Source of the DNA: Octopus sinensis
Taxonomy: Eukaryota
Length of the DNA stretch: 64,000 nt
Assembly: GCF_006345805.1 (NCBI RefSeq)
Contig: NC_043007.1
Location: 20,336,001-20,400,000 of the forward strand
Reading direction: 5' to 3'
Positions 4,350-57,870 of the stretch are shown here, piece by piece. A program made the position numbers and the translations under genes. Below the pieces are notes generated by a model. It had not been told where the DNA came from and did not search any database. It was given only the letters and a program-made list of their open reading frames with translations. The first letter of the stretch is position 1; every line of letters starts with the position of its first letter.

Positions 4350-4388
<39 letters not shown>

Positions 4389-6192: not shown

Positions 6193-6244
6193 TTTATATA
6201 TATTTCCTGATATCAAACAACTAATTGCTTCTTTTACTTGATAG

Positions 6245-10255: not shown

Positions 10256-10794
10256 ATATTCAAATGAACAGGAGCATGTAAAATATTTCTGTACATAACT
10301 ATATTTCATTTAAAGCTGTTTAGTGCATGTCTGATTATACGTAATGACACTTATTTATGGCTGAGATGTATTGAAAAGACAAGACTTATTTAGTTTGAAA
10401 TAATGGTTTAATGTACAATGTTGACTGAACATTTTGAGGATCCAAATCTGAGTTCTGTTAGGATTGAACTTGTAATGGTTCTGCAAGAAAGAAATGAAGG
10501 AATAGAACAGAATTACTGACAATTGAAAGCGATATTGAATGAAGAATATAAAGACAGATATAGAGAAGAAAGCAAAAATAAAAGAATAAAGCCAGGCAAA
10601 AAAATTATATAAAAGAAGGCATGAAATTGCAAGAAGGTGAAAACTATACAGACAAGAAAACATTAGTTAAGAAAGTGATGGAAATCTCTTAAAAGCTATT
10701 AAAGATGGGAAAAAGAACATTAACTGATCCTCAAAGAGTCATGTATCCATCCATTCCCAAATACGACCAACAAAGACAATGGATATTATCCAAC

Positions 10795-12652: not shown

Positions 12653-21817
<9,165 letters not shown>

Positions 21818-27426: not shown

Positions 27427-27522
27427 ATGGTGAAAGCTGCATATGATCCTGTGCGTAAACTGCCTCGCTATTTGCGAACAGAAGACCTTCCAGTACACAC
27501 TTTTACACCCCAAACATATCAA
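27427..27522 (+). CDS. DICER1: Dicer coding exon 1
   Basis: ttccag|ATG: [32 protein letters not shown]|gtaagt (equivalent of TPRxYQ). The ATG directly follows an acceptor, implying an upstream UTR exon. Confidence 0.85.
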
Positions 27523-30500
27523 GTAAGTCACTGATTTGTTTCATAGTCAATTGTTTGCTAATATTATTTCTTTATTGCCCACAAGGGGCTAAACACAGAG
27601 GGGACAAACAAGGACAGACAAAGGGATTAAGTCGATTACATCGACCCCAGTGCGTAACTGGTACTTAATTTATCGACACCGAAAGGATGAAAGGCAAAGT
27701 CGATCTCAGCAGAATTTGAACTCAGAACGTAGCGGCAGACGAATACCTATTTCTTTACTACCCACAAGGGGATAAACACAGAGGGGACAAACAAGGACAG
27801 ACAAAGGGATTAAGTCAATTACATCGACCCCAGTGCGTAACTGGTACTTAATTTATCGACCCCGAAAGGATGAAAGGCAAAGTCGATCTCAGCGGAATTT
27901 GAACTCAGAACGTAGCGGCAGACGAATACCTATTTCTTTACTACCCACAAGGGGATAAACACAGAGGGGACAAACAAGGACAGACAAAGGGATTAAGTCG
28001 ATTACATCGACCCCAGTGCGTAACTGGTACTTAATTTATCGGCCCCGAAAGGATGAAAGGCAAAGTCGACCTTGGCGGAATTTGAACTCAGAACGTAGCA
28101 GCAGACGAAATACCGCTAAGCGTTTCGCCCGAGGTGCTAACGTTTCTGCCAGCTCGCCGCCTTTTGTTTGCTAATATGAAGTCAAATATTAGGAAGTTTT
28201 ATATGTGTGTGTGTTTCTTTTAATAGTTGTCTGAGAAGAACCGGCATAGTATCTCATCCATGCATATTGATAGTTGCAGTGTATTAGCAAAATAAGTTCC
28301 ACAGTGAAAGGGTAAAAATATCTAATGCTACCTTTAGTTAACCCCTTTTGTTACCATATTTCTGATGATAATCCCTTCCTCTGTTTTAGTTAATTCTCAA
28401 AATAAAAACACACGAAACCCGTTAGATTCACTTCAACGTTTGAATTTAATTTGCCAAAATATTTTCATCACTTTGAGACCGTGACCTATTCACTGACAAA
28501 ATCCTGTGCTGCAGCTTGTCAGTGAACATGTCACGGTCTCAAAGCACCGAAAATATTTTGGTAAATTTAAATGTTGAAGAGAATCTAACGGTTTTTGTGT
28601 GTTTTTAAATGGCTTATAAGCACCTTCCACACTGCAATTGTTTTTGCTTCAGCACAAAATAATAAAGAATTTTAAAAAATAAATAAATAAATGCGTCCTT
28701 TTAAAGCCTAGCCAGGATCATGATCCCGGTTTCCTGGTTTCTATGGAGTATGTGTTCCCCAGCTGGATGTGATGCCAGTCCAATGCAGCGTTACTCATTT
28801 TTGCAATGTGAAATGAAGTGTTTTGCTCAAGAACACAACACATTGCCCGGTCCAGGAATCGAAACCACAATCTTACGATCATGATGCTGACACCCTAACC
28901 ACTAAGCCATGTGCCTCTACAATAAAGAATTTAGGAAAATAAATTCTCTCAGTAATAGACACAAGGCCTGAAATTTTGGAGGAAGAGGGAAGAATTTAGG
29001 AAAATAAATTGATAGACAAATAGATAGATCGATAGACAGACAGATTGATTTCTTTACTGGCCACACAGGGCTAAACACAGAAGGGACAAAATACAAAGTA
29101 GAGCTTTTCTTTTTGGGAAGAAGAGAAGGGAAAAAAACAAAGAAAAAGGTGGGGATGAATTCTGATCAAAAGGGATCGTGAAAAAAAGAAGCGGGGGGGC
29201 AATTCCGATCAAAAGGGATCGTGGGGAAAAAAAGTGGGGCCGATCAATAGAGATCGTGTATCACAGTATTGTCAATGTAAAAAAGGGAGAACAGATTAGG
29301 TTTGTCCGTGGATAGAAAAGCTTATGGAAAAGACCACAGGAACCTTGGGCAATAGTGTCCTGCAAAAAAAAACACATTACAGTAAATGGCTCTCTTTATT
29401 CCTTTTGTTTTTCTTTTTTTTTTCTTTTGGTTCATAGGATTATGCTCAAGCTAGATAGGTTGATAGATAGATATAAATATTGCATGTCTTATAATCTCAT
29501 TTTCCTTTATTTAGCTGGAGTTGCTGGATGCTGCCTTACATCAAAACACAATAGTATGTGTGAATTCACCTCCTGGGAAAACATTTATTGCAGTCATGCT
29601 TATCAAAGAAATGGCTATACAAATAAGACCAATGGTACCTGATATTGCTAAACGCAAGTTTACAGTATTTCTAGTATCATCAGGTGAGTTTAATCTATGT
29701 TATACACCTATATCTCTTGATGACCGATTCTAGCAATGGAGACTCCTTCTCTCACTCTTTCTCTGTGTGTGTGTATGTGTGTGCATGCGCATATGTGTAT
29801 CATCATCATCATCATCATCGTTTAACGTCCATTTTCCATGCTAGCATGGGTTGGATGATTTGACTAAGGTCTGGAAAGCCAGGAGGCTGCACCAGGCTCC
29901 AGTCTGATCTGGCAGTGTTTCTACAGCTGGATGCCCTTCACATAATGGTTGCAAATAAACATCACTGTCACACAAGTGATGCTGCTCATTTTCAGTCCAT
30001 TTTTGAAAAGATGGTTGACAACAGGAAAGGCATTCGGCCCTAGAAAATCTATCTCAGCAAATTACCAAATTCCATCTGACCCATTCAAGCATGGAAAATT
30101 GAACAGTACAATGATGACGATAGTGGTGGTGGTGGTGGTGATGATGACAATAATGATGATGATGATGATAATGATAATGACAGCATGTTGTCCTTTTTCT
30201 TTTCTTTTTGACTATTACTCTCAGCTATGGTCACCATCCAGTGTCAAGTTAATCACAGAACTTGAGGTGATCCAACGAAGCTACACGAAGAAGATAGCCT
30301 CTGTGCAGCATATAAGCTACTGGGAAAGACTCAAGAGATTAAGACTCTATTCCTTAGAGCATAGGCGAGAAAGATATGCCATAATATACATCTGGAAGAT
30401 CCTAGGACTTGTCCCAAACTTTGGCATCGAGAGTTACACAAATACTAGAACTGGGTGCTACTGCATAGTGCCTAGGACTCCAAATTTGCCATCAAGATGT

Positions 30501-33500
30501 AGGACAAGATACTGTGATAGCCTGGGCTTCAGAGGTCCACAGCTCTTCAATATCCTCCCGAAGAACCTGAGAGACCTGAATGGGGTGGATGCAGTTGTCT
30601 TTAAAATAAAACTAGATCTCTTCCTGTCAGGTGTCCCAGATGAACCAACTTCACGGCAGGAGGTGCAGATGAGGGCAGCTGCATCGAACTCTCTCATGCA
30701 CCAAATGGCAATTGCTAAAAAGCACTCGTGAAGTAAAATCATGTAGCAACACCAAATGGCAGTGCCCCAGCATGGCCACAGCTCGTGAGCTGAAACTAGA
30801 TAAAATGAAATGAAATGAAATCCTAATCTGATGTTCTGAAAACCATTTTGATGTCTTTTTTTATTTTTTCTTTGTCTTTCAGTCAATGTAGAGTCACAGG
30901 CCAAAGTCGTCTGCCATCATACAGACCTGTCAGTCGGTTATTACACTGATGATACAGAAATAACAGCCGATCAGGCTGATAAATGGATTCCAGAACTGCT
31001 GACACATCAAGTGTTTGTTACAACAGCTTCAGTTTTTCTCAACATTCTACAGTGTGAATTCTTATCACTTAATCAAGTAAACCTTCTTCTTATTGACGAG
31101 TGTTCCGATATCTGTGTTAGTGAGTCACATAAAGAGGTGAGTGAAGTTACTTTCATTTCGTATTTTGTAAAGCATGAAGACACATGTACTTAAAATCATT
31201 TGTTAAAATGTTCAAAAGTATTATAGGTGCAAAGAAGTACCGAAGACATCCTTGTTTTTATTTCTTATTCTTTTATTTCATTGTTTATTGTTTGTTTGTT
31301 ACAGTCATTGAACTCTCATTGAGCTCTCATTGAACAGACCTATTCTCAAAGGAGGAATCATGGCTGTATCATTGAAAAGTTCAGTCCCGAAGTACTCTGT
31401 GTTTTCTACTATATCCTGAGGTTGACCAAAGCCTTATAAGTGGATTTGGGAGACAAAAACTGAGAAAAAGGTTATCGTATATGATAAGGGTGCTAAAATT
31501 TTTATATGTATATATGTATATGATGATGTCGCCATGATAGATCAGTAGCCACTACACACATTTTTTTTCTTTCTTTGTTTCTCTCCTTGTTTTTTTCTGT
31601 GTCCCTCTCTGTAGAAGAGCATAGGCTCGAAATGTAAAAAACTTATTCAATTCCCGAGTGTTATACTAATACATCTGTTTGTTTTTTTACACAACCTGCC
31701 ATGGTCTTTTGTTTTTTTTGTGAACTCTCCCCATATGGTAATGTCATATGTATATGATAGGGGTGGCTGGTTTTTGGATAAAAGAAAATACAGAAGGATC
31801 AGTTAATTATGATTTTATTCAACATATTCCCCTCTCAGATTCACACACTTATTGCAACCGTCCCTCAGTTTTTCTAAGCCCTGTAAAAGAACTCAGAAGG
31901 TTGAGCCTCCAACCAGGCCTTTCACGATACCCTTAAAATCAGGAACTTTTCAGTATTCCCTCATATATCTTTGTCTTAAAAATTATTTATACTCAATTGA
32001 TTTATTCATTTATTGATTTATATTTTTTAGGTAATGAAAATCTATGAAAAATGTGAAAAAAATTTACAGCCTCGAATTGTTGTGTTGACTGCAGTTTTGC
32101 TGTCTAGTAAATGTCGAGACCCTAACGAACTAGAAAACACCATCAACAAATTAGAGTCCATATTTCACTCAGTTGCTGAGACATCAACTTTAGTTTTCTC
32201 TGAACGCCATGGCACCAGCCCCAAAGAAAATGTGCTGGAATGTAATAGTGACTTTGATGAGATCCAGCAAATGCCAGAAGTTTCTATGATCCTGCAAGAA
32301 TCTTTATTTTTTATCGACGAATGTATCCTTTCTGAGAAGGAGAAAGAAAATATTAAAGATCCTCTGCAAGTTCCTCGCACAGCTCTTGCTCAGTGTCTTA
32401 ACATACTCGATGTCCTAGGACCATGGTGTGCCAATCACATAGCAGAAATGTTTATTAAACAGTTAGAAAAAATTATTGGACATGAACAGTCAGAAATTGG
32501 TAAGCTGCTACTACGTTACACAACAACTCAACTCAGGATTGTGACCAAAACATTTGAGAAGTTATTCAACATTGATTATTGTATTGATGACTTTTTACCG
32601 TTTCTTACTCCGAAAGTTATTAAATTGGTGAATATTCTGCGTGGTTATAAACCAGAATTTGAGTTTGTAATTTTGAGAGATGAAAATGCTGATGGAATGG
32701 AACATTCCGATGACGACACGATGGACGATCTATCTGACTCCGACAGTGATGACTACGTTAATTCATCTCACCACAAGAACGACTTACATATCACTTTGAA
32801 ACACCCAGCTGCTGCTCGAGCAGAGTATTCCGACTCCGATCCTTTGGAACAGGAAGAAGAAAAGAGATTATGTGGACTTATTTTCGTTGATTGCAAATAT
32901 GTCGCGTATGCGTTAAATAAGGTAATTGAAGAGATCTGCGCGTGGGATGAGAATATGTGCTTTGTTAAGAACGGACACATCACTGGTTATAAGTACGGAG
33001 CTAAGAGAGAATCCACGACCTTCCGGAAGCATGAAGAGGTTTTACGTAAATTCCGAATGCAGGAGATCAACGTATTGGTAGCGACGTCTAACTTTGAAGA
33101 ATGTATTGACATACCAAAGTGTAATTTGGTTGTTTGCTTTGATCCACCGAAAGACTACAAGTCTTATAGTCAGTCAAAGGTAACGTTTCACTTTTCATTA
33201 AATGCCAATTGTTATATCATGGACTCTGCTCTCTTTACTCTTATGCTTGTTTCAGTCATTTGACTGCGGCCATGCTGGAGCACCGCCTTTAATCGAGCAA
33301 CTCGACCCCCGGGACTTATTCTTTTGTAAGCCCAGTACTTATTCTGTCGGTCTCTTTTTCCCGAACCGCTAAGTAACGGGGACAGAAACACACCAGCATC
33401 GGTTGTCAAGCAATGCTAGGGGGACAAACACAGACACACAAACACACACACGCATATATATATATATACATATATACGACGGGCTTCTGTTGTTGTTGTT

Positions 33501-36500
33501 GTTAAGCAACAAGACGGGTAAGGGTGATTAGGTGATGGTCTAGGGCTTAGGGGCGGGAGACCCCAGACCTTGGAAAAAAAAAAAAACTTTGGACGTCTTG
33601 TTGTAGTCGAGGGCTCTTCGTTTGACACCCGACACCACTGGGAGGTGGCCCTCGAAGTCGCTGAAAATGGTGATATCCAGGTCCAAATTCTTGGACGGCA
33701 AGAATTTGCTGTTGTAGATGACATATGAGGGTTCTTATTTCTTTACTACCCACAAGGGGATAAACACAGAGGAGACAAACAAGGACAGACAAACGGATTA
33801 AGTCGATTATATTGACCCCAGTGCGTAACTGGTACTTATTTAATCGACCCCCGAAAGGATGAAAGGCAAAGTCGACCTCGGCAGAATTTGAACTCAGAAC
33901 GTAGTGGCAGACGAAATACTGCTAAGCATTTCGCCCGGCATGCTGCCTTTTGACATTTGACATTGACTAGATGCCACATGAGGGTTCTGCTATGCTTTGC
34001 TGGACAAGCTTGCACAGATGAGATGTTTATAGTGACTGAATGTTTGTGCTGTACATTAGCTCACTTCTACCACAAAATCAACATAGCTTTAAACAGGTGC
34101 TCAGTGGAATAATTTGAAAAATACATTTGCTCTTGAAAAAGTTTCAGTCATTATGTTTATACCATAAAAGAAATCATTTGTTCCCCACTATTTACTCTTT
34201 TTTACTCTTTTACTCTTTTACTTGTTTCAGTCATTTGACTGCGGCCATGCTGGAGCACCGCCTTTAGTCGAGCAAATCGACCCCAGGACTTATTCTTTGT
34301 AAGCCCAGTACTTATTCTATCGGTCTCTTTTGCCGAACCACTAAGTTATGGGGACGTAAACACACCAGCATCGGTTGTCAAGCAATGCTAGGGGGACAAA
34401 CACAGACACACAAACACACACATACATATATATATATACATATATATACGACAGGCTTCTTTCAGTTTCCGTCTACCAAATCCACTCACAAGGCTTTGGT
34501 CGGCCCGGGGCTATAGCAGAAGACACTTGCCCAAGATGCCATGCAGTGTGACTGAACCCGGAACCATGTGGTTGGTTAGCAAGCTACTTACCACACAGCC
34601 ACTCCTGCGGCTATATTTATTAATATTTGTTTGTCCTCTCTATGTTTAACCCCCTGTGGGCAATAAAGACATATATATATATATACTTATACATGCACTT
34701 ATACAAATTATATTCCACAGGCTCGTGCACGTGCTCGAAATGCAAGTTTCCTCATGCTAATTGACAGTGAAAAAGCACGACCATTTTTAACAGAACTCAA
34801 TACATACAAAAGAATAGAACAGGTAAATAATTTAAATGTTTTTTTTTTTTATATATATCTTTATGGAAACCTATATTTGTTTGGTAGAAATCTATATTTG
34901 TTCAGTAGCATGATAAAAAAAATTGCATGATAATTCTTTCCACCATAAGCACAGGCCTAAATTTTGTTGAGATGAAGAACACACTACATGATTGCATTGA
35001 CCACAATGCTCAACTGTTAACTTTTTTTTCCGTTGACTCTGAACAGAGAAAGGGAAAGTCAAACAGTGATGGGATTTGAACTCAGAATATAGATCCGAAA
35101 GAAATGCTTTTAAACATTTTGTTTATTGTGCTAACGATTCAGCCATCTTACCACCTTCAAAATTTTCAAGTAATACAACTAGAAATTTCTTGCTTTTTGT
35201 CACAAGTTTCCATAATCTTCAAGAAAGAGAAAAATTAGTTAAGGACATGGGGAAAAGAAAGATAAACTATATATATATATATATATATACATACATATAT
35301 ACAACAATATATATGAACGATAAACTATATATATATATATATATATATACATACATATATGCAATGGGCTTCTTTCAGTTTCTGTCTACCAAATCCACTC
35401 ACAAGGCTTTGGTCGGCTTAAGGCTATAGTAGAAGACACTTGCCCAAGGTGCCATGCAGTTGGACTGAACCCGGAACCATGTGGTTGGTAAGCAAGCTAC
35501 TTACCACACAGCCACTCCTACACCTATATTGAACGAAATAAATCTTGGGGATTTGATTTCTCTGCAACTCAGAGAAACCAATGTCAATACATTGCTATAT
35601 TAACATATGTTTTCTAGGAAACTGGTTTTCTTAGAAAGAATGTACTTTATTTTAAAGCATGTTGTCTGGTGCGAAGATGAAGTAGAGCATACAGTATTCG
35701 TCCATTAAAGTCTATATTTTTTTGTGTTGTTTCAGGTTTTATTGCGAAAATACATAAATAAAGCTGAGCCTTCCAAGGAAGAACTTATACAAATTCTTGA
35801 ACAGTACAACATCCCACAGTCGGTCGTTTTAAATACCAATAACAACACAAACAATAACAACAACAACAACAACAACAATTCTTCTTCTCCCATCACACTG
35901 TTTTCTGCCATCTCTATTGTTAACAGGTCAGTTAAACAAACTCTCTCTCCAAATTCTCTATCAAGAAATTATTATTTTCTACTCTAGGCACAAGGCCTGA
36001 AATTTTGGGGGAGGGGGCCAGTCGATTAGATCTACCCCAGTATGCAAGTGGTACTTAATTTATCAACCCCGAAAGGATGAAAGGCAAAGTCAACCTCATC
36101 AACATCCAGTACATTCAGTACATACTAAGTCGATTATATCAACCCCAGTGCGTAACTGGTACTTATTTAATCAACCCTGAAAGGATGAAAGGCAAAGTCG
36201 ACCTCGCCGGAATTTGAACTCAGAACATAGAGGCAGACGAAATACCGCTAAGTATTTCACCTGGCGTGCTAACGTTTCAGCCAGTTCGCCACCTCAAAAT
36301 TTTATGGGTTTCTACTTATTTTTTTTATAATGATGTCTAAACCAAAGATTAGACTTTTATTATAACTTGTCGATTTTCACTTGACCATTGTGAAGAATTA
36401 ACACCTTGCAATGACCCCACTTGTGCCAGCGCCATGTAAAAAGCACCCAGTATATTCTGTAAAGTGGCAATAAAAAAAGCATTCAGCCATAGAATCCATC

Positions 36501-39500
36501 CCAAAGCCGATACCGGAGCATCATGCAGCCCTGCAGTCCCCTGGATCCTGTCAAACCGTTCAACCTATAATAGCAGGAAAAATTGATGTTAAATAAAGAT
36601 GATGATTATGATGGTGACGGTGATGATATACTATTATTGTAATTGAAAGTTTAGTATTTTCTGTGATAAGTAAACTATAAACAAAGAAATTGTTCAGCTT
36701 ACAAATTATTTTCTTTTTATTCTTTTCTTCAGATACTGTGCTAAGTTACCTAGTGATGCCTTTACTCACCTCACACCCAAATGCACTGTTGAAAAGGTCA
36801 ACGTTAATAACGAAACCCATTATGTTGCTACTCTTAAACTACCAATCAATTCTCCAGTGAAGAAAGATGTTCAAGTATGTTACAAAACTAAATAACTTTT
36901 CTGCTTTTTTTTTTTTTAATTAAAGTTTCAGCTCAGAGCTGCGGCCATGTTGATGCGCCGCCGTTGCTTCATAACTTTCCAAATTCATTTCAGTGTTTGT
37001 TCATTCTCTGAGTGCTGCATCCTTCAAAACTTCCATGCTTTCTGAGATTCGCCAACACTACACCTGATTTTCTCCCCTCCATACACACACAAGCATGTAT
37101 CTGACTCATACACTGTTCACTTCCCAGACATTTGTACATTACTGCATATGCTTTATACGCCCTTTTGACAAGTTGTGGTGCACCTGAGCACTGTATACAA
37201 TAATTTCATTATTATATTATTATTACAACAAGGTGCTGGAAAGCTCCTAGCTTTGGGCAAAAGAAAATACAAGAAGATCAGTAAATTATCATTTTATTGA
37301 ACATATTCCCCTCTCAGATTCACACACTTATTGCAGCAGTCCTTCAGTTTTTCTAAGCCCTGTAAATTAAATTGGAAAGTTGAGCCTCTAACCAGGCCTT
37401 TTGCAATACCCTTAAAGCCAGGAACTTTTCAGCAACCCCCTTGTATATATTCTGTATACTATATTAAATTATATGTGAAGGTGCATGGCTCGGTGGTTAG
37501 AGTGTCGAGCTTACGATTGTGAGGTTGTAATTTGAGGAATATTGCTAAAATCAGAGCTGATTTGATATCAAATATATAATTTGATAAAATGTGATTAATT
37601 CTACCTTTATTAACTTATGAACTATTAAAAATGATTGTTGTAAAAATTCCATGAAATGTTGAACTGAAATTATACTTATTTTTACTTTAGGGAGATGTAA
37701 TGCCAAGAGAAAAGTTAGCTAAAATGTCTGCTGCGCTCAAAATGTGCCAAGAACTCCAAATTCAAGGTAAACAGAAAACTATTATTTGGAAAAATAATTT
37801 TTATACAGGCTTATCTCTGTGGTTAAGAAGCTTGCTTCCCAACCATATGTCTCTGGTTCAATCCCACTGCACAGTACTTTGGATAAGTGTTCTGGGCTGA
37901 CTAATACCCAGTGAGTGGATTTGGTTGACTGAAACTGGAAAAAGCCTGTCATATGTGTATGTGCATATATGTGTGTTTGTGTGTACCCTTCTCTTGATGT
38001 CATGGTTGTAAACGAGCATCACTGTCATACAGGTGAGTTTGTTCATTTCCAGTCATCCATGAAAAACCAGACATTTTGATGTGGTGTGAAAGAAAGAAAG
38101 TTGTGAATCTAGTCGAGTTAATGGTTCCTCATAAAGATAACATGGACGCCGCTCGGGCTCAAAAGATTGACCGTTATGTAAACCTCCTCGAGAAATGTGA
38201 AGATGCAGGCTGGAAAGCGGAGCATTTTCCAATGGAAGTTGGATATAGATGGTTTATTGGACACAGTGTTAGACGACTGTTATCGTTAGGCCTAACTCAT
38301 CATAAAGTCAATACAACCATGACCGATATCCAAACTACAGTGGAGAAGGCTAGCCACTGGATTTGGTTAAAAAGAGACGATGAGCGATGGCTAGGAAAAT
38401 ATTGAGCTTTACTGCACCAGCTTCACATAGCAGCCCTAGACCTTCACAGTAGGTAAATCCACTTTACATTAATATGTTTCTGATAAATTAACTCTTTTTC
38501 TTTACAGGAGAACTAGACGATCACTTCCTTCCGGTGGGGAAAGAGATTTTGAAGCATGAAGAGAAAGAAGCCCTAAAGGATCCTCTGAAATATGGGGAAG
38601 AAGATGAGGCAGAGTGGGAAGAAGAGGAAGAGGAGGAACTCATTGGCTGCCCAAGACCAGGCACCACAAAACGAAAACAGTATTACTTCAAAAAGGTACT
38701 TCTGTGTTTTTACTAGTTTAGAGTAGTACTTCTTTGGGGAGGTGAATGAATTCCATATCACACACACAAAAAGAAAAAAAACCAACATAATTTACAGAGA
38801 TTTATAGACTAAACCATTTGGCTTTTTAGATTCGTGTATCAAACTTTGAAATCCTACCAAAAGTTTATTTTCATTATGTAAAGTACAATTGTGTACAAGC
38901 ATAGGTGTGGGTGAAAAGCTTGCTTCTGAACCATGTGGTCTTGGGTTCAATCCTATTGCACAGCACATCTGGTTGGGAAGCAAAATTCTTATTTCTTTAT
39001 TACCCACAAGGGGCTAAATATAGAAGGGACAGACAAAGGGATTAAGCCGATTACATCGACCCCAGTGCGTAACTGGTACTTAATTTATTGACCCTGAAAG
39101 GATGAAAGGCAAAGTCAACCTCGGCGGAATTTGAACTCAGAACGTAAAGACAGATGAAATACCTATTTCTTTACTACCCACAAGGGGCTAAACATAGAGG
39201 GGACAAACAAGGACAGACAAAGGGATTAAGTCGATTACATAACTGGTACTTAATTTATCGACCCCGAAAGGATGAAAGGCAAGGTCGACCTCAGCGGAAT
39301 TTGAACTCAAAACATAATGGCAGACGAAATACCGCTAAGCATTTCACCCGGCGTACTAACATTTCTGCACCTGAACAAAGAAACATACATTAAGCTTTAA
39401 CCCTTTGTCATTTAATCCGGCCATATTCTGCCCAAATATTCTCCCTGTTCACGTTCAGACTGGCTTGATCATGCCTCTCACACCTGCCTTATGAAAATAT

Positions 39501-42500
39501 TCAATCATGTCATGAAAATCTCAAAGCTACAAGATAATAAATGATTCCATTGAAAACCATGTGAATAAATCAAATAAGAATTACATTTGACAGAGTAATC
39601 TGAACGCTAAAGGATTTTTTTTTTTTACATGTTTCAGTCATTTGACTGCGGCCATGCTGGAGCACCGCCTTTAGTCGAGCAAATCGACCCCGGGACTTAT
39701 TATTTTGTAAGCTCAGTACTTATTCTATCGGTCTCTTTTGCCGAACCGCTAAATGACGGGGACGTAAACACACCAGCATCGGTTGTCAAGCAATGCTAGG
39801 GGGACAAACACAAACACATACACATACACACATATATACGACAGGCTTCTTTCAGTTTCCGTCTACCAAATCCACTCACAAGGCACTGGTCGGCCCGGGG
39901 CTATAGCAGAAGACACTTGCCCAAGATGCCACACAGTGGGACTGAACACAGAACCATGTGGTTGGTTAGCAAGCTACTTACCACACAACCACTCCTGCGC
40001 CTATTTAACCCTTTAATATTTAATCCAGCCATATCCAGTTGAAATATTCTACTTGTTTTATGTTAAAACTGATCATATCCAGCCTCTCACACATCCCCGA
40101 CAATGTCATTCTAAAAATGTGCAAACACACCATTAAAATCACTGAGCTACTAGATAATGCATGATTAATTCAAAGCAATCTGGATAAATAAGCAATAGGC
40201 GCAGGATTGGCTGTGTGGTAAGTAGGTTGCTAACCAACCACATGGTTCCGGGTTCAGTCCCACTGCGTGGCATCTTGGGCAAGTGTCTTCTGCTATAGCC
40301 CTGGGCCGACCAAAGCTTTGTGAGTGGATTTGGTAGACGGAAACTGAAAGAAGCCTGTCGTATATATGTATATATATATGTGTGTGTGTATATGTTTGTG
40401 TGTCTGTGTTTGTCCCCCTAGCATTGCTTGACAACCGATGCTGGTGTGTTTATATCCCTGTCACTTAGCGGTTCAGCAAAAGAGACCAATAGAATAAGTA
40501 CTGGGCTTACAAAGAATAAGTCCCGGGGTCGATTTGCTCGACTAAAGGCGGTGCTCCAGCGTGGCCGCAGTCAAATGACTGAAACAAGTAATAGAGTAAG
40601 AGTAATAGATTTGACAAAGAAACCTGAAGGCTGAAGGGTGAAACACCTGTCTGCTTCTCTCATTCACTCATTTTCAAAACACTAGAACAAGAATGAATTG
40701 TCCTAATCTATTATATAAAATCTGTTCTGTCTGTCTGTGTGTGTCTTCTAGGGTCTCGGGCATCCTCCATCTGATTGCGCTCAAATTTGATATGTAGATA
40801 CCGACGGTATCAGGGCTTGTATAAGTCTTGAAAGAAATTACAAAAATTGATTCCAGGTGAGAATGTGATCAATAAAGCTGTGGGAACGTACATTTGTACG
40901 TGCAAGTATATCAGCTGTTGCGATGTACTTACTGGTACTTTAAACTCTTTGGTTGCATATTTATGTGAATAAAATCGTTTTTCTTTGGAATAGAAAAAAA
41001 AAGTCTATCTTTATTTCTTCTTTTGCTGGTATCTCAAATTTAGGTTAAATCAGTGTTTCTCAAAAGGGAGGCCTATGGGACGGTCGGACAAGTTGTTTTG
41101 TGAAAATTTGGTTTAAATGTTTGACAACTCAGCACCGTCCTTTGGAGGGGGGCGTTTTGGTCGTTGTATATAAAATGATATATACAGCCCCCTATAAGGC
41201 GGCGAGCTAGCAGAAACGTTAGCGCGCAGGGCGAATTGCTTACCGGTATTTCGTCTGTCGTTACATTCTGAGTTCAAATTTCGCCGAGGTCGACTTTGCC
41301 TTTCATCCTTTCGGGGTCGATAAATAAAGTACCAGTTTCGCAGTGGGGTCAATGTAATCGACTTAATCCCTTTGTCTGTCCTTGTTTGTCCTCTCTGTGT
41401 TTAGCCCCTTGTGGGTAGTAAAGAAATATATACAGCCCCCTATGTTCTAGGTGTTTATCAATATAGATCCTTTGAGAAATGAAATTATTTCTCCAGCCCT
41501 ACTTATAATTGTTTATTTGTTGATTCATGTCTGTCTTGTTCAGACTTTTTTCTTGTTGGATTCTCTTTTCCTATTTGACGTATTTAACGAAAAATTAATT
41601 CAATGGAGGATTTTTGTTTTTTTGTTCTTTATAGGCTGCAGATGCTCTGATTAACAACCATGTTGATACTAACCAGCTTTGTTGCTTATATAATATTCAT
41701 ATGGTACTGACTGGACCGATCACAGAAGAGCAAAATACACGTGGAAGGAAGATCTATGTTCCAGAAAACACACCAAGAGGGTTTGGAATCTTGTCTTTGA
41801 AAAACATTCCTCAGGTAAATAATAATAATAATAATAATCATCATCATCATTATTTAACGCCTGTTTTCCATGCTAGCATGGGTTGGACGATTTGACCGGG
41901 GATCTGGGAAGCCAGAAGGCTGCACCAGGCTCCAGTCTGATCTGGCAGTGTTTCTACAGCTGGATGCCCTTGCTAACGCCAACCACTCCGTGGGTGTTGT
42001 GGGTGCTTTTTACGCGCCACCTGCACAGGTGCCAGGCAAGGCTGGCAACGGCCATGATCGGATTGGTGCATTTTACGTACCACCGGCACAGAAGCCAGTC
42101 AAGGCAGCGCTAATAATAATTACAATAACAATCCTTTCTACTATAAGCACAAGGACTGTAATTTTGGTGGGGAGGAGTTCGTTGATTACATTGACTCTAG
42201 TACTTATCATCATCATCATTTAACATCCGCTTTCCATACCAGCATGGGTTGGACAGTTTGATCAGCCATGAGGCTGCACCAGGCTCCAATCTGATTTGGC
42301 ATGGTTTCTACAGTTGGATGCCCTTCCTAATGCCAACCGCTCCAAGAGTGTAGTGGGTGCTTTTTACGTGCCACTGGCATGGAAGCTAGTCAGGCAGCAC
42401 TGGCATAAGATCCACACAGATTAGTCATTGGAGATTATGGTATAATATCTTCTGTAAAACCTAATCAATTGTTTCTTGTTGCTCAGGTGCCGATTAGGAT

Positions 42501-45500
42501 TGATCCATATCTGTTGCTGTTGGGCAGGTGCACACGTTTTAAGCTCCATTTAAGACAACCTATGAATAACTGCCATTCACATGGTACATCATCATCATCA
42601 TCATTTAGCATCTGATTTCTATACTGGTATGGGTTAAGTGGTTTGACTGGAACTGGTAAGCTGGGGAGCTGCACCAGATTCCAATCTGATTTGACATGGT
42701 TTCTACGGCTGGATGCCCTTAACCCTTTAGTGTTCACATTATTCTGCCAAAATCAATGCTTTTTTATCCACATTGTTTTGAACTAATCATGCATTATCTT
42801 GTAGTTATGAGATTTTGATGAGGTAGTTGTTAATTTTTAAAACGATATTGTAGGGTTGGTGTGAGAAACCAGATCTGGCCAGTTCGAACATAAAACAGGC
42901 AGAATACTTTTGGCTGGATATGGCCGGTTTAATTGCTAAAGGGTTAATGGCAACCACTCCAAGAGTGTAATGGGTGCTTTTTACATGCCACCACCATAGG
43001 AACCAATTACGTGACACTGGCTTCACATCATTGTAAAAAATGAAGTCATTTTCCTCCAGGATGAAGAGCAGCAGCATCATCGTCGTCGTCATTTAACGTC
43101 CGCTTTCCATGCTAGCATGGGCTGGACGATTTGACTGTGGGCTGGCAAACCAGATGGCTGCACGAGGCTCCAGTCTTGATCTGGCAGAGTTTCTACAGCT
43201 GGATGCCCTTCATAATGCCAGTAAATAGAAAAATACTCTGTTAATAAATGCATTTCTCTTATTGATAAGTGTGTTAGCTGAAAACCTAAAGCTGCTAGAA
43301 ACGAAGTAAAGTCATATTTTTCTTTAGTGGTGTGAATACATAACTAGAATTGGGTCTAAACAGCACAGCTCCCATGACTTTCGGAAACATTTTTTCATGC
43401 TAAGAGTTGCCGAAGTATGGAACAAACTGCCAGCATCAGTTGTTAGTTGTCGGAGCACTGCATCCTTCAAAACTTCCATGCTTCCTGAGATTCGCCAACA
43501 CAACACCTGATTTTCTCCCCTCCATACACACGCAAGCATGTATCTGACTCATACACTGTTCACTTTCCAGACATTTGTACATTACTGCATATGCTTTATA
43601 CGCACTTTTGACAAGTTGTGGTGTACCTGAGCACTGTATACAATAATTTCATTATTATTTTTTTATCAAAATCTGAAGTACCAAAACACATTTTTAAATG
43701 CTTTGTGGCATTTCATCTGTCTTGATGTTCTGAGTTCAAATTCTGCCATGGTTGACTTTACCTTTCATCCTTTCAGGGTTGATAAAATAAGTACCAGTGG
43801 AGCACTTAGGTCGATGTAATCAGCTTACCCATCCCCCATAAATTGCTGGGTTATGCCAACATTTGAAATCAATCATAAATCTGTATGAATAATTTTGGGA
43901 CAATTTCTCTCTCAACAGGTTCCATGTTTTCCAGTATATACTCGTTCTGGAGAGGTAACTGTATCTCTTGATATGGTTGAGTCAAATGTATCAATAAATG
44001 AAAGTCAACTGAATAAGCTGACAATTTTTCATCGGTTTGTGTTCAGCACAGTACTTCGACTAGAGAAGGATCCTATTGACTTTATGCCTGACGAAGCAAA
44101 AGTGGGTTATCTTATAGTACCTTTGATAGAAGGTTTGTATTTTTCTTTTGTGACTATCTTATTTCGTTTGAACTGGAAAGCAAGAAGCAGTTGTAGTTAT
44201 GTGAGGTTTCACTTTCATTCTCAGAAAACTTACATGCATTACATTTCACACTATGTCTCCTTTCTGTATGCGTATGTATGTATGTATGCATGTGTGTGAG
44301 TGTATATGTATATATGTGTGCATATATATATATGTGTGGAGGCGCAATGGCCCAGTGGTTAGGGCAGCGGACTCACGGTTGTAGGATCGCGGTTTCGGTT
44401 CCCAGACCAGGCGTTGTGAGTGTTTATTGAGCGAAAGAAAACACCTAAAGTTCCACAAGGCTCCAGCAGGGGTTGGTGGCGATCCATGCTGTACTCTTTT
44501 GCCACAACTTCCTCTCACTCTTTCTTCTGTTGGCCTGCTCGCTTAGCCAGCGAGGTGGCATCATTTGAAGGCTAAAACAATGTGAAGCACATTGTGACCA
44601 GCGATGTGTAGCAACATCTGATAGCCTGGTCAGTCACGGTGATCACGGTGATGTATATATGTATGTGTTCTAATTGTTAGTAGCGAGGTTATAAAATCTC
44701 TGATTGGATTTAGAATAAATTTAGAGCTGACTTTTAACGAAGCTTTAAATGAGAAATTAAATTACCATCTAAAATGTTTTATTTCAGAAGATATTAATTA
44801 TTAGAATTTATCCAAATTGCTGTTGAATAGTAATTGATTTCAGATTAGACGGTTGTGTTTGGATCATGTCTCAGTACTGTCTGTGCCAAGATCTTGTACA
44901 TTTAGAATTCGAAACAAGATTAGCAAATGAAAATGCAAAACTGTATAAACTTAAGACCAGTTCAAGTATACTTGTCACCAGTTCGAATATGTTTGAGTGA
45001 TATTTGAACCTGTGAGGGCTTGTCACTGCAGTTTGACTCCAGACAAACTGCAGTGACAAGCCTTTACAAGTTCAAATGTCTTTCAAAGCTTGTATGCTTT
45101 TCTTCACTGCTTCAGACATCTACTTATGTAGTAACAAAAATGGTTAAAGATAAATATAATGGAAATTTTCTTTGTGTAAGTGGGATGAGCATCTATTCAC
45201 CTAAAATTAGTGGATATTATAAAATTTTATATTCAGCTTCTTTGATTTAGAGATGCAATGCTTAACCCTTTAGTGTTCGCATTATTCTACCAAAATTAAT
45301 GCTTTTTCATCCACATTGTCTTGAACTAATCAGGCATTATCTTGTAGCTATGAGATTTTGATGAGGTAGCTGTTAATTTTTAAAACGATATTGTAGGGTT
45401 GGTGTGAGAAACCAGATCTGGCCAGTTTGAACATAAAACAAGCAGAATACGTTTGGCCGGATATGGCCGGTGTAAATGCTAAAGGGTTAAATATATACAT

Positions 45501-48500
45501 CATTGTTTCTTTTGAAATTTAATTAAAACAAGATCAGTTGAATGAAAATATTTTTTTTTTCCTACATGCTTATGTACTTTTATGTTGTATACAGATGACA
45601 GTGGACATCATATTAACTGGAATTTTGTGAATGAAGTCCAGTTTTCCTTCAGCAGAAATCATCCCGATATTTATGATTCAAAAAGAGAGAAATTTAAGTT
45701 TTGCACTGAAGACTTCGAAGATGCAGTTGTGATGCCTTCATATCGCAACATGGATCAACCACAGCATTTCTATGTTGCTGAGATCAAATACGACCTGAAT
45801 CCAAACAGCCCGTTTCCTTCTCCTGAGCTTTACAGGACATTTAATGAGTATTACTCTAAAAAATACGGTCTTCATATCACTAATTTGGAACAACCTTTAT
45901 TGGATGTCGACCATACTTCTGCTCGTCTGAATTTATTAACTCCACGTTACATGAATCAAAAAGGCATCGCTTTGCCAACCAGCAGCGCAGAAACGAAGAA
46001 GGCCCGTCGAGAAAACTTACAGCAAAAACAAATCTTGATTCCAGAATTGTGTGTGGTTCATATCTTCCCTGCTTCTCTGTGGCGTAAAGCCGTGTGTCTT
46101 CCTGCTATTCTTTACAGAATAAACTATCTTTTGATTGCTGAAGAGATTCGTGTCAAAGTTGCCCAAGGAACCAAAATTGGTGTTATTGAAATTCCCAAAG
46201 GCTTTCACTTTCCTAAACTTGATTTTGGTTTTGAAACCAACCCAGAAAAGATTATTGATAATAAAACTGAAAGTGAGATGAAGGTTACAAAAGCCAAGGA
46301 AAACGGAACCTGCACTTCTTTGTCGAAGACTGCCGCAAGTTATAGCAACAAGCTTGTATTTAAAGAAGTTAAAGAAAACAATGAATTAATAAAAAATGAT
46401 TCAGAAAATCAGAAAGATATCAAAGAAATGCCAGTAAGAGAATTGGTAAATAATGTTGAGTGCAAGAAATTAAACTATAAAAAGCCTTTTATAAAGAGCA
46501 GTTCAACAGAATCTCTACATAAAAACTGCAATAAAGATGACTGCAACAGACCTTTGAAGGATTCTAATAGAATTCAAGAGGCCCTTAACGCTGCAGCAGG
46601 AAAGAACAATTATGAGCGGAGAGAAGATTCCGTTAGTACCTCTTCTAGCAGAAGTTATAACCATTCAGAATTTAACAATTTTAAATCCTGCTCTGTGAAC
46701 AACAGCGAAGAAAGGAAATTTCAACCTCAACAATTTACAAATAAGAAAAAGCATGAAAAAGATGCCCAATGGTCAAATGATAACATTAAAGAGGAGAAAC
46801 TGAAAGAGGAAAAGAATAATAAGTCTTTCTCAAAATCTCCTTTTACTAACCTGCAAAATTCTGGTCGAATTCCCAATGGCAGTAAAATGGATTTTAAGAT
46901 AACTTTCGATATTGCAAAGGATTTGAATCCCAAAGACAGTCTTGATTCTTTTAAAGAAACCAGTGAAGTTCCCTCTAATGTTAAATTTCAGAATGACACT
47001 CTAAAGAAAGATCTAGAATCTCTTGATATTCGTTTGATTTGTGATAACAGAAGCTATCCTGAAGGAAACGCTTTCCATCAAATGGATAAGCAAATTCGAA
47101 AAGAAAAGAAAGCTTCAATGACGTTTAGCCAAATAGATGACTTTTATCAGACAAAGTCAACGAAATCTGAAACGGTGAGTTCTACTACAAAAATTGTAGA
47201 AATCACAGATTCAGAAGACCATCTTAAAGACAATACTGACAAGCTTTCTAACGGCAACTGTGATAAAAGTGAATTGAAAAGCATATCTCCTACTTTTAGT
47301 CCCAAAAAAGATCCTGTGTGTAAAACCTCTGTGCAGAATTCTAATAACCAAGCAGGTTATTCTCCAATTGTAGAAACTTGTAAAGAATTGAAAAATAATT
47401 TTAATAATGCTCGTCTTCATTCTTCAAATATAACCATCCCCAATAGCAACACGGATTCTGTAAAAGATGTGGAAGAAAAACTTTGCAGTAACTCAAAAGG
47501 AAATGAGGAAAATTTAAAGACTTGTACATCCACCACCACTTTCTCTTCGAATAAAGACCAACAATGTAATTCATATACAGCTAGCAATCCAAAAGATAGT
47601 GTTGCTCTACACTCTAATTCCACTGCCACAACATTTAATCCTCCCCAGGAGAAAACTTTATCAACAACATCTCCAGACTCTGTTTCTTCATCTAGTCATC
47701 AATTACCAACACCCGCTTCCCATTCATTATCAGTGCTACCTGAGCAAGTGTGTAATCATTCTAATTCATCAAATCAGTCTGTATTTAATTGTACTCAGTC
47801 TACTTCTTCACCGACAGATGATGACAAAGCATCCTCAGATTCAGAGATCACTCCATGTCAGACGGAGCAAACTGCTTCCCACCTTCAGGACTCTACTGAC
47901 CAACCAGAGGTAGCCGTACAAGACACCTCTGCTCCGGCACCTTTACGTGATAGAGACCAACGAGATGTTGAAGCTGTTTCACCACCCATAGTCATACATA
48001 ATAATAATGATGATAATAATAATAATAATAATAACAACAACAATATCAATGTCATTCAAAGCAATTCCCCCATTGATGCAAAAGTACCCCCCTCTAACAC
48101 AAACCAATGCACCACTCCTTTGTCCTCTCATGATAACGCCATCTGTGATAATACAAGACACAATTCCGACTCCGATGTCTTTCAAAATATAACAACATTC
48201 AGTGGCCAGTCAGCAGTAGTAGATATGTCTAAAATATCTGACTATGGCCAATGTGATGACACAACCAATGCAAACCTTGTTTACAGCTATGCTGAGGCTC
48301 AGGAAAAACTTGCTCAGTCTTCAAACACACCACCTCTCTTGTTAGACACCGATATTGAACTGAGTTGTTACATTGGTCCAAGTCCATGCATTATTTTGCA
48401 GGCGCTTACCATGTCAAATGCAAATGATTTTTTCAGCCTTGAGAGATTAGAAACCATTGGCGATTCCTTTCTTAAATATGCTATCACTGTTTACCTTTAC

Positions 48501-51500: not shown

Positions 51501-51712
51501 AAAGAGATTGGCTACAAATTCTCTGACCGATCTTATCTCCTACAAGCTTTCACACATGCATCATATCATTATAACACAGTGACTGACTGCTACCAGCGGT
51601 ATGTTTTACTATTTTATAAACTAAATTTTTTCTTGAAATAATTTTAGGAATTACAATTGTTGGTATTTCCTTTATATTACTGTATTCAATGGTATAAAAA
51701 CACTTTGGTGTA

Positions 51713-51743
<31 letters not shown>

Positions 51744-52302
51744 ATATATATATATGTGTAGGGAAAGTTTACGAAAAAAACTAAAGACGAAGACAGGTGG
51801 TGTACAAAACAAAAAGATTTATTAGTATAACGCTCAGGAATAGAAAAAGTCTTTTATGTTTCGAGCCTACACTCTTCTACAGAAAGGTACACAGAAAAAA
51901 CAAGGAGAGATATATGCATGCCTCAATTTCAGCAGTGCATCTTCACATAAAAAAGTTGTTTGTGCATTAAGGCATGTAATATAAGCACAACTCTGCAAGG
52001 TGATGTTTTTGGAGAATAAAATGTGCATCTTGGGGAAATTTCAAATCTGGGTTCTCATTCCTAAAGTATTTTTCGACGATTATGATGATGATGATGACGA
52101 CGACGACGCTGCTGCTGTTGTTGTTGTTGTTGTTGTTTAGGTCACTGCTTGGAATCGAACTTGGAATCTTGGAGTTAGTAGCCTGCGGTATTAACCACTA
52201 CGCCATATGCTCGGGCATATGGCGTAGTGGTTAAGAGCGCGGGCTACTAACCACAAGATTCCGAGTTCGATTCCAAGCAGTGACCTGAACAATAACAACA
52301 AC

Positions 52303-52335
<33 letters not shown>

Positions 52336-57818: not shown

Positions 57819-57870
<52 letters not shown>

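What the first reader, a model, noticed from the sequence alone, without database searches (positions are those of the whole stretch)
29563..34741. Dicer helicase with five SF2 ATPase motifs degenerate while both RNase III sites are intact
Seen, against the recalled human DICER1 consensus: motif I NSPPGKT vs NTGSGKT (29563-83); motif II DECS vs DECH (31095-106); motif III LTAV vs LTAS (32085-96); motif [11 protein letters not shown] vs ATSIVEEGVD (33081-110); motif VI SYSQSKARAR vs SYVQSKGRAR (across the exon 4/5 junction). The domain keeps full length and an open frame, so the fold appears retained while catalysis decays. Established: arthropod Dicer-1 enzymes specialised for miRNA have a degenerate helicase, whereas ATP-dependent processive siRNA production needs these motifs. 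Inference: an ATPase-deficient, miRNA-specialised Dicer, which would bear on antiviral RNAi and dsRNA handling in a lineage with heavy A-to-I editing. The degeneration may be shared with other protostomes, so novelty needs checking.
Basis: partly seen in the sequence, partly recalled or inferred. Interest (0 to 1): 0.72.

Follow-up and report, generated by a model that had tools for sequence, protein, structure and literature searches.

The report
Cephalopod Dicer with eroded helicase ATPase motifs
This is the intact, single-type Dicer gene of an octopus-like cephalopod whose helicase has lost several conserved ATP-site residues while its RNA-cutting sites are intact; the same erosion occurs across molluscs and is already published, so the finding is real but ordinary.

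Summary
All five motif strings are at the stated coordinates. They sit in a 17-exon, 2415-aa Dicer gene (27427-59895, + strand) with every Dicer domain and RNase IIIa/IIIb signatures matching mammalian Dicer.

The five substitutions hit positions conserved in 76-96% of 124 non-mollusc Dicers. The charged catalytic residues survive: Walker A Lys, Walker B Asp-Glu, and motif VI Gln/Arg/Arg. The first Pro of SPPGKT aligns with Drosophila Dcr-2 G31, and the G31R mutant hydrolyses ATP poorly.

The helicase is predicted to keep the Dicer fold (pLDDT 81.6; TM 0.66-0.70 to human, mouse and fly Dicer-1). It is under purifying selection against cuttlefish.

The erosion is not specific to this gene. All seven other mollusc Dicers I aligned, plus one metagenome contig, lack the canonical motif I, and many are more degenerate. 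Cuttlefish shares DECS and SK|ARAR but has TAT and EEG, so the motif III and V changes are lineage-specific.

Published work already reports mutated DECH boxes in Mollusca including Cephalopoda, a "likely inactive" helicase, one Dicer gene in octopus, and no Dicer-2. Loss of ATPase activity is plausible but untested, and "miRNA-specialised paralogue" is the wrong frame.

The parts
27427..59895 (+). Complete Dicer (Dicer-1 clade) coding region: 17 coding exons, 7248 nt of coding sequence, 2415 aa
   Evidence: Gene model built from tblastn hits and splice sites. Every junction is AG/GT and there is a single open frame. Pfam finds the full Dicer architecture.
27427..27522 (+). Exon 1: start codon, ends ...FTPQTYQ
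   Evidence: 58-61% identical to the N-termini of the Sinanodonta and Haliotis Dicers. GT donor present.
29515..29683 (+). Exon 2: Hel1 with motif I
29563..29583 (+). Motif I (Walker A), NSPPGKT against NTGSGKT. Lys and Thr are kept. The Thr-Gly-Ser is replaced by Ser-Pro-Pro, and the first Pro aligns with Dcr-2 G31.
30883..31136 (+). Exon 3: Hel1 with motifs Ia to II. This is the fastest-evolving coding part compared with cuttlefish (52% identity).
31095..31106 (+). Motif II (Walker B), DECS against DECH. Asp-Glu are kept and His becomes Ser. Shared with Sepia pharaonis.
32031..33179 (+). Exon 4: motif III, Hel2i (partner-binding domain), an acidic linker, and Hel2 with motifs IV, V and the first half of VI
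32085..32096 (+). Motif III, LTAV against LTAS. Sepia and a second cephalopod contig have LTAT.
32280..32579 (+). Dicer partner-binding domain (Hel2i), well conserved
   Evidence: Pfam PF20930, 99.7 bits. pN against Sepia is 0.13.
33081..33110 (+). Motif [11 protein letters not shown] against ATSIVEEGVD. The Gly-to-Cys change is specific to this lineage; Sepia has ATSNFEEGID.
33162..33179 (+). Motif VI, first half (SYSQSK), at the end of exon 4
34721..34822 (+). Exon 5. It begins ARARAR, the second half of motif VI. Gly becomes Ala while Gln, Arg and Arg are kept. Shared with Sepia.
35736..35926 (+). Exon 6: linker with a poly-Asn run and the start of the Dicer dimerisation domain (DUF283)
36733..36874 (+). 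Exon 7: Dicer dimerisation domain
37691..37766 (+). Exon 8
38508..38695 (+). Exon 9
41635..41814 (+). Exon 10: platform domain
43919..44132 (+). Exon 11: platform domain
45595..49169 (+). Exon 12 (3575 nt): PAZ, connector, a long low-complexity insert, and RNase IIIa
48441..48479 (+). RNase IIIa signature [13 protein letters not shown] (catalytic Glu and Asp present)
49026..49064 (+). RNase IIIa second signature [13 protein letters not shown] (catalytic Asp and Glu present)
51384..51598 (+). Exon 13: start of RNase IIIb
54909..55164 (+). Exon 14: RNase IIIb with the [11 protein letters not shown] signature
56768..56936 (+). Exon 15: RNase IIIb second signature [13 protein letters not shown] (56825-56863)
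58213..58288 (+). Exon 16
59700..59895 (+). Exon 17: Dicer dsRBD and the stop codon (59893-59895)

Best explanation
The window carries the intact Dicer gene (Dicer-1 clade) of a coleoid cephalopod, probably an octopod. According to the literature it is the only Dicer type in molluscs.

The RNase IIIa/IIIb centres, PAZ/platform and dsRBD are canonical, so the enzyme should dice RNA measured from the PAZ/platform end. The N-terminal helicase is still a folded, selected domain (Hel1, Hel2i, Hel2), but its nucleotide site has been eroding. The Gly, His and Ser residues that shape the P-loop and couple the motifs have been replaced, while the charged residues remain.

I infer that ATP binding and hydrolysis are strongly weakened or lost. 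On this reading the helicase works as an ATP-independent scaffold: a clamp for pre-miRNA loops and a docking site for a dsRBP partner through Hel2i, as in vertebrate Dicer and insect Dicer-1.

The erosion is old and stepwise:
- A non-canonical motif I occurs in every mollusc examined.
- DECS and SK|ARAR are shared with cuttlefish.
- TAV and EEC arose after the split from the cuttlefish lineage.

Shown: sequence, gene structure, domain content, sharing across taxa, predicted fold, purifying selection. Inferred: loss of ATPase activity and the scaffold role.
For: - **Gene and domains:** 17 GT-AG exons, one open frame, 2415 aa. Pfam finds Dicer_PBD, Helicase_C, Dicer_dimer, platform, PAZ, two RNase III domains and Dicer_dsRBD. 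The DEAD domain scores only 23.5 bits, below its 26-bit cut-off.
- **Family assignment:** the best solved relatives are human and mouse DICER1 (E = 1.5e-108), against Dcr-2 at 1e-28.
- **RNase III signatures** match mouse Dicer.
- **Rarity of the substitutions:** all five hit positions conserved in 76-96% of 124 non-mollusc Dicers. The window keeps 11 of 16 key motif residues. That places it in the degenerate mode of a bimodal distribution, with other molluscs (8-15) and insect Dcr-1 (7-10); 98 of 132 sequences score 15 or more.
- **Functional precedent:** the position equivalent to Dcr-2 G31 is Pro here, and G31R cripples ATP hydrolysis and siRNA production.
- **Fold retained:** AlphaFold2 gives pLDDT 81.6 and pTM 0.78. 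Foldseek TM is 0.66-0.70 to human and mouse Dicer and to Dcr-1.
- **Selection against Sepia:** pN is 0.30 in Hel1 exon 3, 0.13 in Hel2i and 0.07 in Hel2, against a saturated pS of 0.72-0.9.
- **Sepia genomic exons:** DECS, TAT, EEG and SK|ARARAR.
- **Other molluscs:** Haliotis, Lymnaea, Elysia, Sinanodonta, Ylistrum and Dreissena, plus one unnamed mollusc-like metagenome contig, all lack the canonical motif I.
- **Literature:** the DECH box is mutated in Mollusca, Annelida and Cephalopoda, the helicase is called 'likely inactive', and there is no DICER2 or siAGO (PMC11114477). [quoted passage not shown] There is one Dicer gene in O. bimaculoides (PMC4793324).
Against: - No activity data exist for any mollusc Dicer.
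- All charged catalytic residues are retained (Lys of GKT, Asp-Glu, Gln, both Arg). This is unlike other molluscs, which lost several of them, so residual or altered nucleotide binding is possible.
- Motif content predicts Dicer ATPase poorly. Human Dicer has perfect motifs but is reported inactive in PMC10159624 and active in PMC11658451.
- dS against Sepia is saturated, so selection is shown only qualitatively.
- Motif I could not be read in another cephalopod. The Sepia exon lies outside the DNA I could fetch.
- No transcript data were available.
- Copy number rests on the literature, not on this window.
Confidence: 0.7

Rival explanations
1. The helicase is re-tuned rather than dead. It keeps GKT, DE and Q..R..R, so it may still bind ATP, and perhaps hydrolyse it slowly, using the nucleotide as a conformational switch or for limited dsRNA handling.
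For: The Walker A Lys/Thr, Walker B Asp-Glu and motif VI Gln/Arg/Arg are all retained, whereas other molluscs lost several of these. Hel2, which carries motifs IV to VI, is the most constrained part of the helicase (pN 0.07). G31R Dcr-2 still hydrolysed about 20% of the ATP in 60 min. One paper reports that the human Dicer helicase can hydrolyse ATP (PMC11658451).
Against: Two prolines sit in the P-loop, where backbone amides normally bind phosphate (general knowledge of P-loop NTPases). The conserved His, Ser and two Gly residues that link motifs II, III, V and VI are also gone. Hel1 evolves three to four times faster than Hel2. The DEAD profile falls below its Pfam threshold.
Confidence: 0.2
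2. The genomic motifs are corrected at the transcript level, either by A-to-I recoding or by alternative exons carrying canonical motifs.
For: Coleoid cephalopods recode many transcripts (general knowledge). No RNA data were available to exclude this directly.
Against: The codons are tca-cct-cct, tcc, gtt, tgt and gct. None can reach the consensus residue by A-to-G changes. tblastn with six canonical or mollusc helicases finds only one hit per helicase segment in the whole window, so there are no duplicate or mutually exclusive exons. Sepia encodes DECS and ARAR in its genome too.
Confidence: 0.03
3. The locus is a decaying paralogue or pseudogene, or an assembly artefact, and a canonical Dicer lies elsewhere in the genome.
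For: The Hel1 profile score is low and exon 3 diverges quickly.
Against: The gene has 7248 nt of uninterrupted open frame with 17 canonical splice junctions. The RNase III, PAZ and dsRBD domains are strongly conserved, with 92% identity to Sepia in RNase IIIb. pN is far below pS throughout. The literature finds one Dicer in octopus and no Dicer-2 in molluscs.
Confidence: 0.02

Closest known systems
Mollusc DICER1, for example Octopus bimaculoides XP_014781475.1 as analysed by Formaggioni et al. 2024 (PMC11114477)
   Same: Both are the single Dicer-1-type gene with the full domain set and a mutated DECH box. The helicase is judged 'likely inactive', and there is no Dicer-2 or siAGO partner pathway.
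   Different: That paper scored only motif II and writes the cephalopod box as 'ECSN'. Here, and in Sepia, the box reads DECS followed by D. This work adds motifs I, III, V and VI and separates cephalopod-wide changes from lineage-specific ones.
Vertebrate Dicer (human and mouse DICER1; PDB 5ZAK, 7XW3, 7YYM)
   Same: It is the closest solved relative by sequence (E = 1.5e-108) and by predicted fold (TM 0.65-0.70). It is a single Dicer that processes substrates from the PAZ/platform end and uses the helicase as a scaffold for pre-miRNA and a TRBP-type partner.
   Different: Vertebrate Dicer keeps all 16 key motif residues, yet has little or no ATPase activity. This protein has lost 5 of the 16.
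Insect Dicer-1 (Drosophila Dcr-1, PDB 8DFV and 8DGI)
   Same: It has degenerate helicase ATPase motifs (7-10 of 16 key residues retained) with intact RNase III centres. The beetle sequence even shares the QSKARARA form of motif VI. Predicted fold TM is 0.70.
   Different: Insects pair Dcr-1 with an ATP-driven Dcr-2, whereas molluscs reportedly have no second Dicer. Dcr-1 lost the Walker A Thr and the Walker B Glu (the Fopius sequence also lost the Lys), which are all kept here. Sequence similarity is much lower (E = 5e-37 against 1e-108).
Drosophila Dicer-2 and AncD1D2 (ATP-dependent, processive helicases)
   Same: Same three-lobed RIG-I-like helicase fold.
   Different: Those enzymes have canonical motifs I to VI. 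The window replaces the residue equivalent to Dcr-2 G31, whose mutation cripples ATPase activity.

Membership tests
Dicer (metazoan Dicer-1 clade) | Domain order: helicase (Hel1, Hel2i/PBD, Hel2), DUF283, platform, PAZ, RNase IIIa, RNase IIIb, dsRBD | tested here: met
   Pfam finds all domains in order on the 2415-aa model. The DEAD (Hel1) match is present but at 23.5 bits, below its 26-bit cut-off.
Dicer (metazoan Dicer-1 clade) | Catalytic acidic residues in both RNase III signatures | tested here: met
   [36 protein letters not shown] and [15 protein letters not shown] align with mouse Dicer.
Dicer (metazoan Dicer-1 clade) | Closer to Dicer-1 and vertebrate Dicer than to arthropod Dicer-2 | tested here: met
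   The helicase gives E = 1.5e-108 to human DICER1 and 1e-28 to Dcr-2. The best database hits are mollusc 'endoribonuclease Dicer' proteins. No phylogenetic tree was built.
Catalytically competent RIG-I-like/DExH (SF2) ATPase | Motif I with the xTGxGKT P-loop | tested here: not met
   The motif reads NSPPGKT. GKT is kept, but the Thr-Gly-Ser is replaced by Ser-Pro-Pro. That Gly is present in 101 of 124 non-mollusc Dicers.
Catalytically competent RIG-I-like/DExH (SF2) ATPase | Motif II DECH | tested here: not met
   The motif reads DECS. His is present in 114 of 124 non-mollusc Dicers. Asp-Glu are retained.
Catalytically competent RIG-I-like/DExH (SF2) ATPase | Motif III TAS/TAT, motif V EEG.D, motif VI QxxGRxxR | tested here: not met
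   The motifs read TAV, EECID and QSKARAR. Gln, Arg and Arg are retained.
Catalytically competent RIG-I-like/DExH (SF2) ATPase | Measured dsRNA-stimulated ATP hydrolysis | not testable with these tools
   This needs recombinant protein.
miRNA-specialised Dicer paralogue (arthropod Dcr-1 type) | Coexists with a second, ATP-dependent Dicer that makes siRNAs | not testable with these tools
   Only one 64-kb window is available. The literature reports one Dicer in O. bimaculoides and no DICER2 in Mollusca, which argues against membership.
miRNA-specialised Dicer paralogue (arthropod Dcr-1 type) | Degenerate helicase motifs with intact RNase III centres | tested here: met
   The window retains 11 of 16 key motif residues, against 7-10 in insect Dcr-1. 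RNase III centres are intact.

The most novel reading that the evidence does not exclude
Cephalopods, unlike other molluscs, kept every charged catalytic residue (Lys, Asp-Glu, Gln, Arg, Arg) and replaced only the Gly, His and Ser residues. The helicase might therefore be a nucleotide-binding but non-translocating switch, selected so that the sole Dicer does not thread long dsRNA. That would leave long duplexes to ADAR in a lineage that recodes heavily. The further changes in this lineage (TAV, EEC) would then be adaptive rather than drift.
Probability: 0.07. Interest if true: 0.6.

Novelty: already known. Interest (0 to 1): 0.2.

Why it matters
The finding bears on whether the only Dicer of cephalopods can use ATP to process long or viral dsRNA, or whether it is limited to ATP-independent cleavage measured from the PAZ end, as in vertebrates. 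That affects how antiviral defence, endogenous siRNA production and experimental RNAi should be expected to work in these animals.

The question has already been raised for molluscs as a whole. Aderounmu et al. 2023 and Formaggioni et al. 2024 both flag degenerate mollusc Dicer helicases and call for biochemistry. This locus adds a motif-by-motif description and a rough order of events within cephalopods, not a new phenomenon.

Tried and rejected
- **First homologue search.** The word-indexed search with the full 558-aa helicase returned only 31 hits, all under 1000 aa, and no cephalopod or named mollusc. The acidic low-complexity linker probably flooded the candidate list.
- **Second homologue search.** A query without the linker gave more mollusc fragments but still no cephalopod. 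The exhaustive representative search was what found the molluscs and Sepia.
- **Species identification.** An exact look-up of the large exon-12 ORF found nothing on record.
- **Motif I in a second cephalopod.** The Sepia locus starts about 3.4 kb upstream of exon 3 and holds no exon 2. The ENA cephalopod contig ends 67 bp upstream of exon 4. A metagenome scan with the exon 2 peptide found only another non-cephalopod mollusc.
- **dN/dS.** Synonymous sites against Sepia are saturated (pS 0.72-0.9 or higher), so only pN values and the pN-to-pS contrast are usable.
- **First gene model.** I initially ended exon 6 at 35818, which deleted the conserved ...ISIVNR|YCAKL segment. A sensitive tblastn search corrected the end to 35926.
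- **Rejected readings.** Restoration by RNA editing is excluded by the codons. Alternative canonical exons are excluded within this window. A pseudogene is excluded by the open frame and selection.

Full report

Yes.
- NSPPGKT at 29563-29583
- DECS at 31095-31106
- LTAV at 32085-32096
- [10 protein letters not shown] at 33081-33110

The fifth motif is split by an intron. Exon 4 ends ...SYSQSK at 33179 with a GT donor, and exon 5 starts at 34721 after an AG with [10 protein letters not shown].

A phmmer search of the assembled helicase against all solved structures gives human and mouse DICER1 as best hits (E = 1.5e-108). The alignment is collinear over the whole helicase. It places the five strings opposite NTGSGKT, DECH, LTAS, ATSIVEEGVD and SYVQSKGRARA.

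**2. What is the gene?**

I built the gene model from tblastn hits of fish, bivalve and cuttlefish Dicers, then inspected each splice site.
- It has 17 coding exons from the ATG at 27427 to the stop at 59893-59895.
- Every junction is AG/GT and there is one open frame of 2415 aa.
- Exon 1 (27427-27522) is 58-61% identical to the N-termini of the Sinanodonta and Haliotis Dicers.

Pfam finds the full Dicer architecture: Dicer_PBD (Hel2i), Helicase_C, Dicer_dimer, platform, PAZ, two RNase III domains and Dicer_dsRBD. The DEAD (Hel1) profile scores only 23.5 bits, below its 26-bit cut-off, which itself reflects the degenerate Hel1.

The RNase IIIa and IIIb signature segments align with mouse Dicer with all four acidic pairs present. 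'Both RNase III sites intact' is therefore confirmed.

**3. Whose gene is it?**

An exhaustive search of 1.84 billion representative proteins gave molluscs as the best full-length hits:
- Haliotis asinina (48% identity) and Sinanodonta woodiana (49%)
- Ylistrum balloti, Lymnaea stagnalis, Elysia marginata and Dreissena polymorpha

It also returned a partial Sepia pharaonis DICER1 at 79% identity. The window therefore comes from a coleoid cephalopod that is clearly diverged from cuttlefish, most likely an octopod. I could not name the species.

**4. How unusual are the substitutions?**

I aligned 132 Dicer helicases. Among the 124 non-mollusc sequences, the replaced residues are strongly conserved:

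| Motif | Conserved residue | Count of 124 | This window |
|---|---|---|---|
| I | Gly | 101 | Pro |
| II | His | 114 | Ser |
| III | Ser/Thr | 94 | Val |
| V | Gly | 119 | Cys |
| VI | Gly | 115 | Ala |

The window's own residues are absent or nearly absent at those positions outside molluscs.

I then scored 16 key motif positions per sequence. The distribution is bimodal:
- 98 of 132 sequences keep 15 or 16.
- The window keeps 11, alongside other molluscs (8-15), Ciona (9) and insect Dcr-1 (7-10).

One pattern is specific to this protein. Every lost residue is a Gly, His or Ser, while every charged catalytic residue is kept: Lys of GKT, Asp-Glu, Gln and both Arg.

**5. Is the change shared, and when did it arise?**

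I fetched the Sepia pharaonis genomic locus (L002) and read the exons its annotation skips:
- Motif II is DECS, the same as here.
- Motif VI is SYSQSK|ARARAR, the same as here.
- Motif III is TAT. A second cephalopod contig, L001, also has TAT.
- Motif V is ATSNFEEGID, with Gly kept.
- The Sepia exon carrying motif I lies outside the DNA I could fetch.

All seven other mollusc sequences, from six species, lack the Thr-Gly of motif I (GSNSGKA, GSIAGKT, GATSSCM, GCPNSKL, GSSSGRM, GCSESKL). So does one unnamed, mollusc-like metagenome contig (GASSGKM). Many have also lost Lys/Thr, the Glu of DECH or the Gln of motif VI.

The sequence of events is therefore:
- motif I erosion before or early in mollusc radiation;
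- His-to-Ser and Gly-to-Ala before the octopod-decapodiform split;
- Ser-to-Val and Gly-to-Cys later, in this lineage.

**6. Is the domain still functional as a fold?**

AlphaFold2, run with a 40-sequence alignment, gives mean pLDDT 81.6 and pTM 0.78. Only the N-terminal tail and the acidic linker have low confidence.

Foldseek matches the Dicer helicase in human and mouse Dicer and in fly Dcr-1, with TM normalised to the query of 0.66-0.70. It matches AncD1D2, Dcr-2, MDA5 and RIG-I at about 0.5-0.6.

Against Sepia, nonsynonymous divergence is far below the saturated synonymous divergence of 0.72-0.9:
- Hel1 exon 3: pN 0.30
- Hel2i: pN 0.13
- Hel2: pN 0.07

Amino-acid identity is 52% in exon 3, 79% in exon 4 and 92% in RNase IIIb. 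The helicase is thus under purifying selection, weakest in the ATP-binding lobe Hel1.

**7. Can transcripts repair the motifs?**

The codons are tca-cct-cct, tcc, gtt, tgt and gct. No A-to-G change converts any of them to the consensus residue, so A-to-I recoding cannot restore the motifs.

tblastn with six canonical or mollusc helicases finds one hit per helicase segment in the window, so there are no alternative exons. I had no RNA data.

**8. Mechanism.**

The first Pro of SPPGKT aligns with Drosophila Dcr-2 G31. The evidence is the ungapped offset, where query residue 2 matches chain residue 14 of the 1722-aa chain. I checked that offset against Dcr-2 numbering (G31, K34) recalled from memory, and no residue-level alignment to Dcr-2 was printed.

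G31R Dcr-2 is 'very inefficient at hydrolyzing ATP', cannot process blunt dsRNA and largely loses siRNAs in flies (PMC7668257). From general knowledge, proline lacks the backbone NH that P-loops use to hold phosphate.

I therefore consider it likely that ATP binding or hydrolysis is strongly reduced, with confidence of about 0.7. On that reading the helicase serves as an ATP-independent clamp and partner-docking platform, as in vertebrate Dicer and insect Dcr-1.

This is an inference. Motifs predict Dicer ATPase activity poorly. Human Dicer has perfect motifs, yet it is reported inactive in PMC10159624 and active in PMC11658451.

**9. Comparison with what is known.**

- Formaggioni et al. 2024 report that the DECH box is mutated in Annelida and Mollusca, naming Cephalopoda. 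They say the helicase is 'likely inactive' there, and that molluscs have DICER1 but no DICER2 or siAGO (PMC11114477). Their supplementary figure includes the O. bimaculoides Dicer.
- Aderounmu et al. [quoted passage not shown]
- Rosani et al. 2016 list one Dicer gene in O. bimaculoides.

The 'miRNA-specialised paralogue' framing does not fit, because there is no second Dicer.

What I did not find published is incremental: the five-motif description for a cephalopod, the retention of all charged residues, and the order of events relative to cuttlefish.

**10. Verdict.**

I classify the finding as already known and score interest at 0.2.

Noticed in passing
window 6238-6723 (+): An open reading frame encodes a fibrinogen C-terminal globular domain (Pfam PF00147, E = 2.7e-45). 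It is probably an exon of a fibrinogen-related protein gene about 20 kb upstream of Dicer.
   Followed up: partly
window 3684-4106 (+): A fragment encodes a Pif1 helicase 2B domain (PF21530, E = 5e-16). It is probably a remnant of a Helitron-type or Pif1-like element.
   Followed up: partly
window 4074-5263: A simple repeat of about 1.2 kb reads as HTYIHTYI... or MYVCMYVC... in every frame. It coincides with a strong local GC skew of +0.44.
   Followed up: no
window 29946-30728 (+), inside Dicer intron 2: A 261-aa open frame with no Pfam hit. From memory, it looks like the tail of a retroelement ORF.
   Followed up: partly
window 1188-1664, 19757-20254, 43328-43507 (+): Three copies of a repeat whose translation ends ...[37 protein letters not shown]. 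This is a dispersed element family of unknown type.
   Followed up: no
window 27593-28171 (+); related copies at 36001-36327, 39148-39390 and 55232-55733: There are three tandem units of about 180 bp (translation [37 protein letters not shown]...). Dispersed relatives lie in several Dicer introns, which suggests a SINE-like or satellite repeat.
   Followed up: no
window 35830-35880 (exon 6) and roughly 46300-48200 (exon 12): The coding sequence contains a poly-Asn run between the helicase and DUF283, and a low-complexity insert of roughly 600-700 aa between the PAZ connector and RNase IIIa. These bring the protein to 2415 aa. Other mollusc Dicers are similarly long, at 2181-2541 aa.
   Followed up: partly
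L002 (Sepia pharaonis CAHIKZ030000030.1), locus 3437-3691, 9884-11026 and 18059-18160: The deposited Sepia DICER1 model (CAE1142787.1, 1211 aa) omits the Hel1 exon, the first ~37 codons of the exon-4 orthologue (with motif III) and its Hel2 half, and the following exon that carries the second half of motif VI. It ends in a long F/S/L-rich read-through. The missing exons are present and intact in the genome.
   Followed up: yes
PMC11114477, text and supplementary figure S5: The paper writes the cephalopod DECH box as 'ECSN'. This window and the Sepia genome both read D-E-C-S followed by D. The likely cause is a one-column alignment offset or a typographical slip.
   Followed up: partly
alignment (P0052 Ciona intestinalis; P0042 Scomber scombrus; P0114 Henosepilachna): Similar erosion has arisen independently elsewhere. 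Ciona Dicer keeps only 9 of 16 key residues, including an EDC in motif V. The mackerel sequence has DDCH. The beetle sequence shares QSKARARA with this cephalopod.
   Followed up: partly
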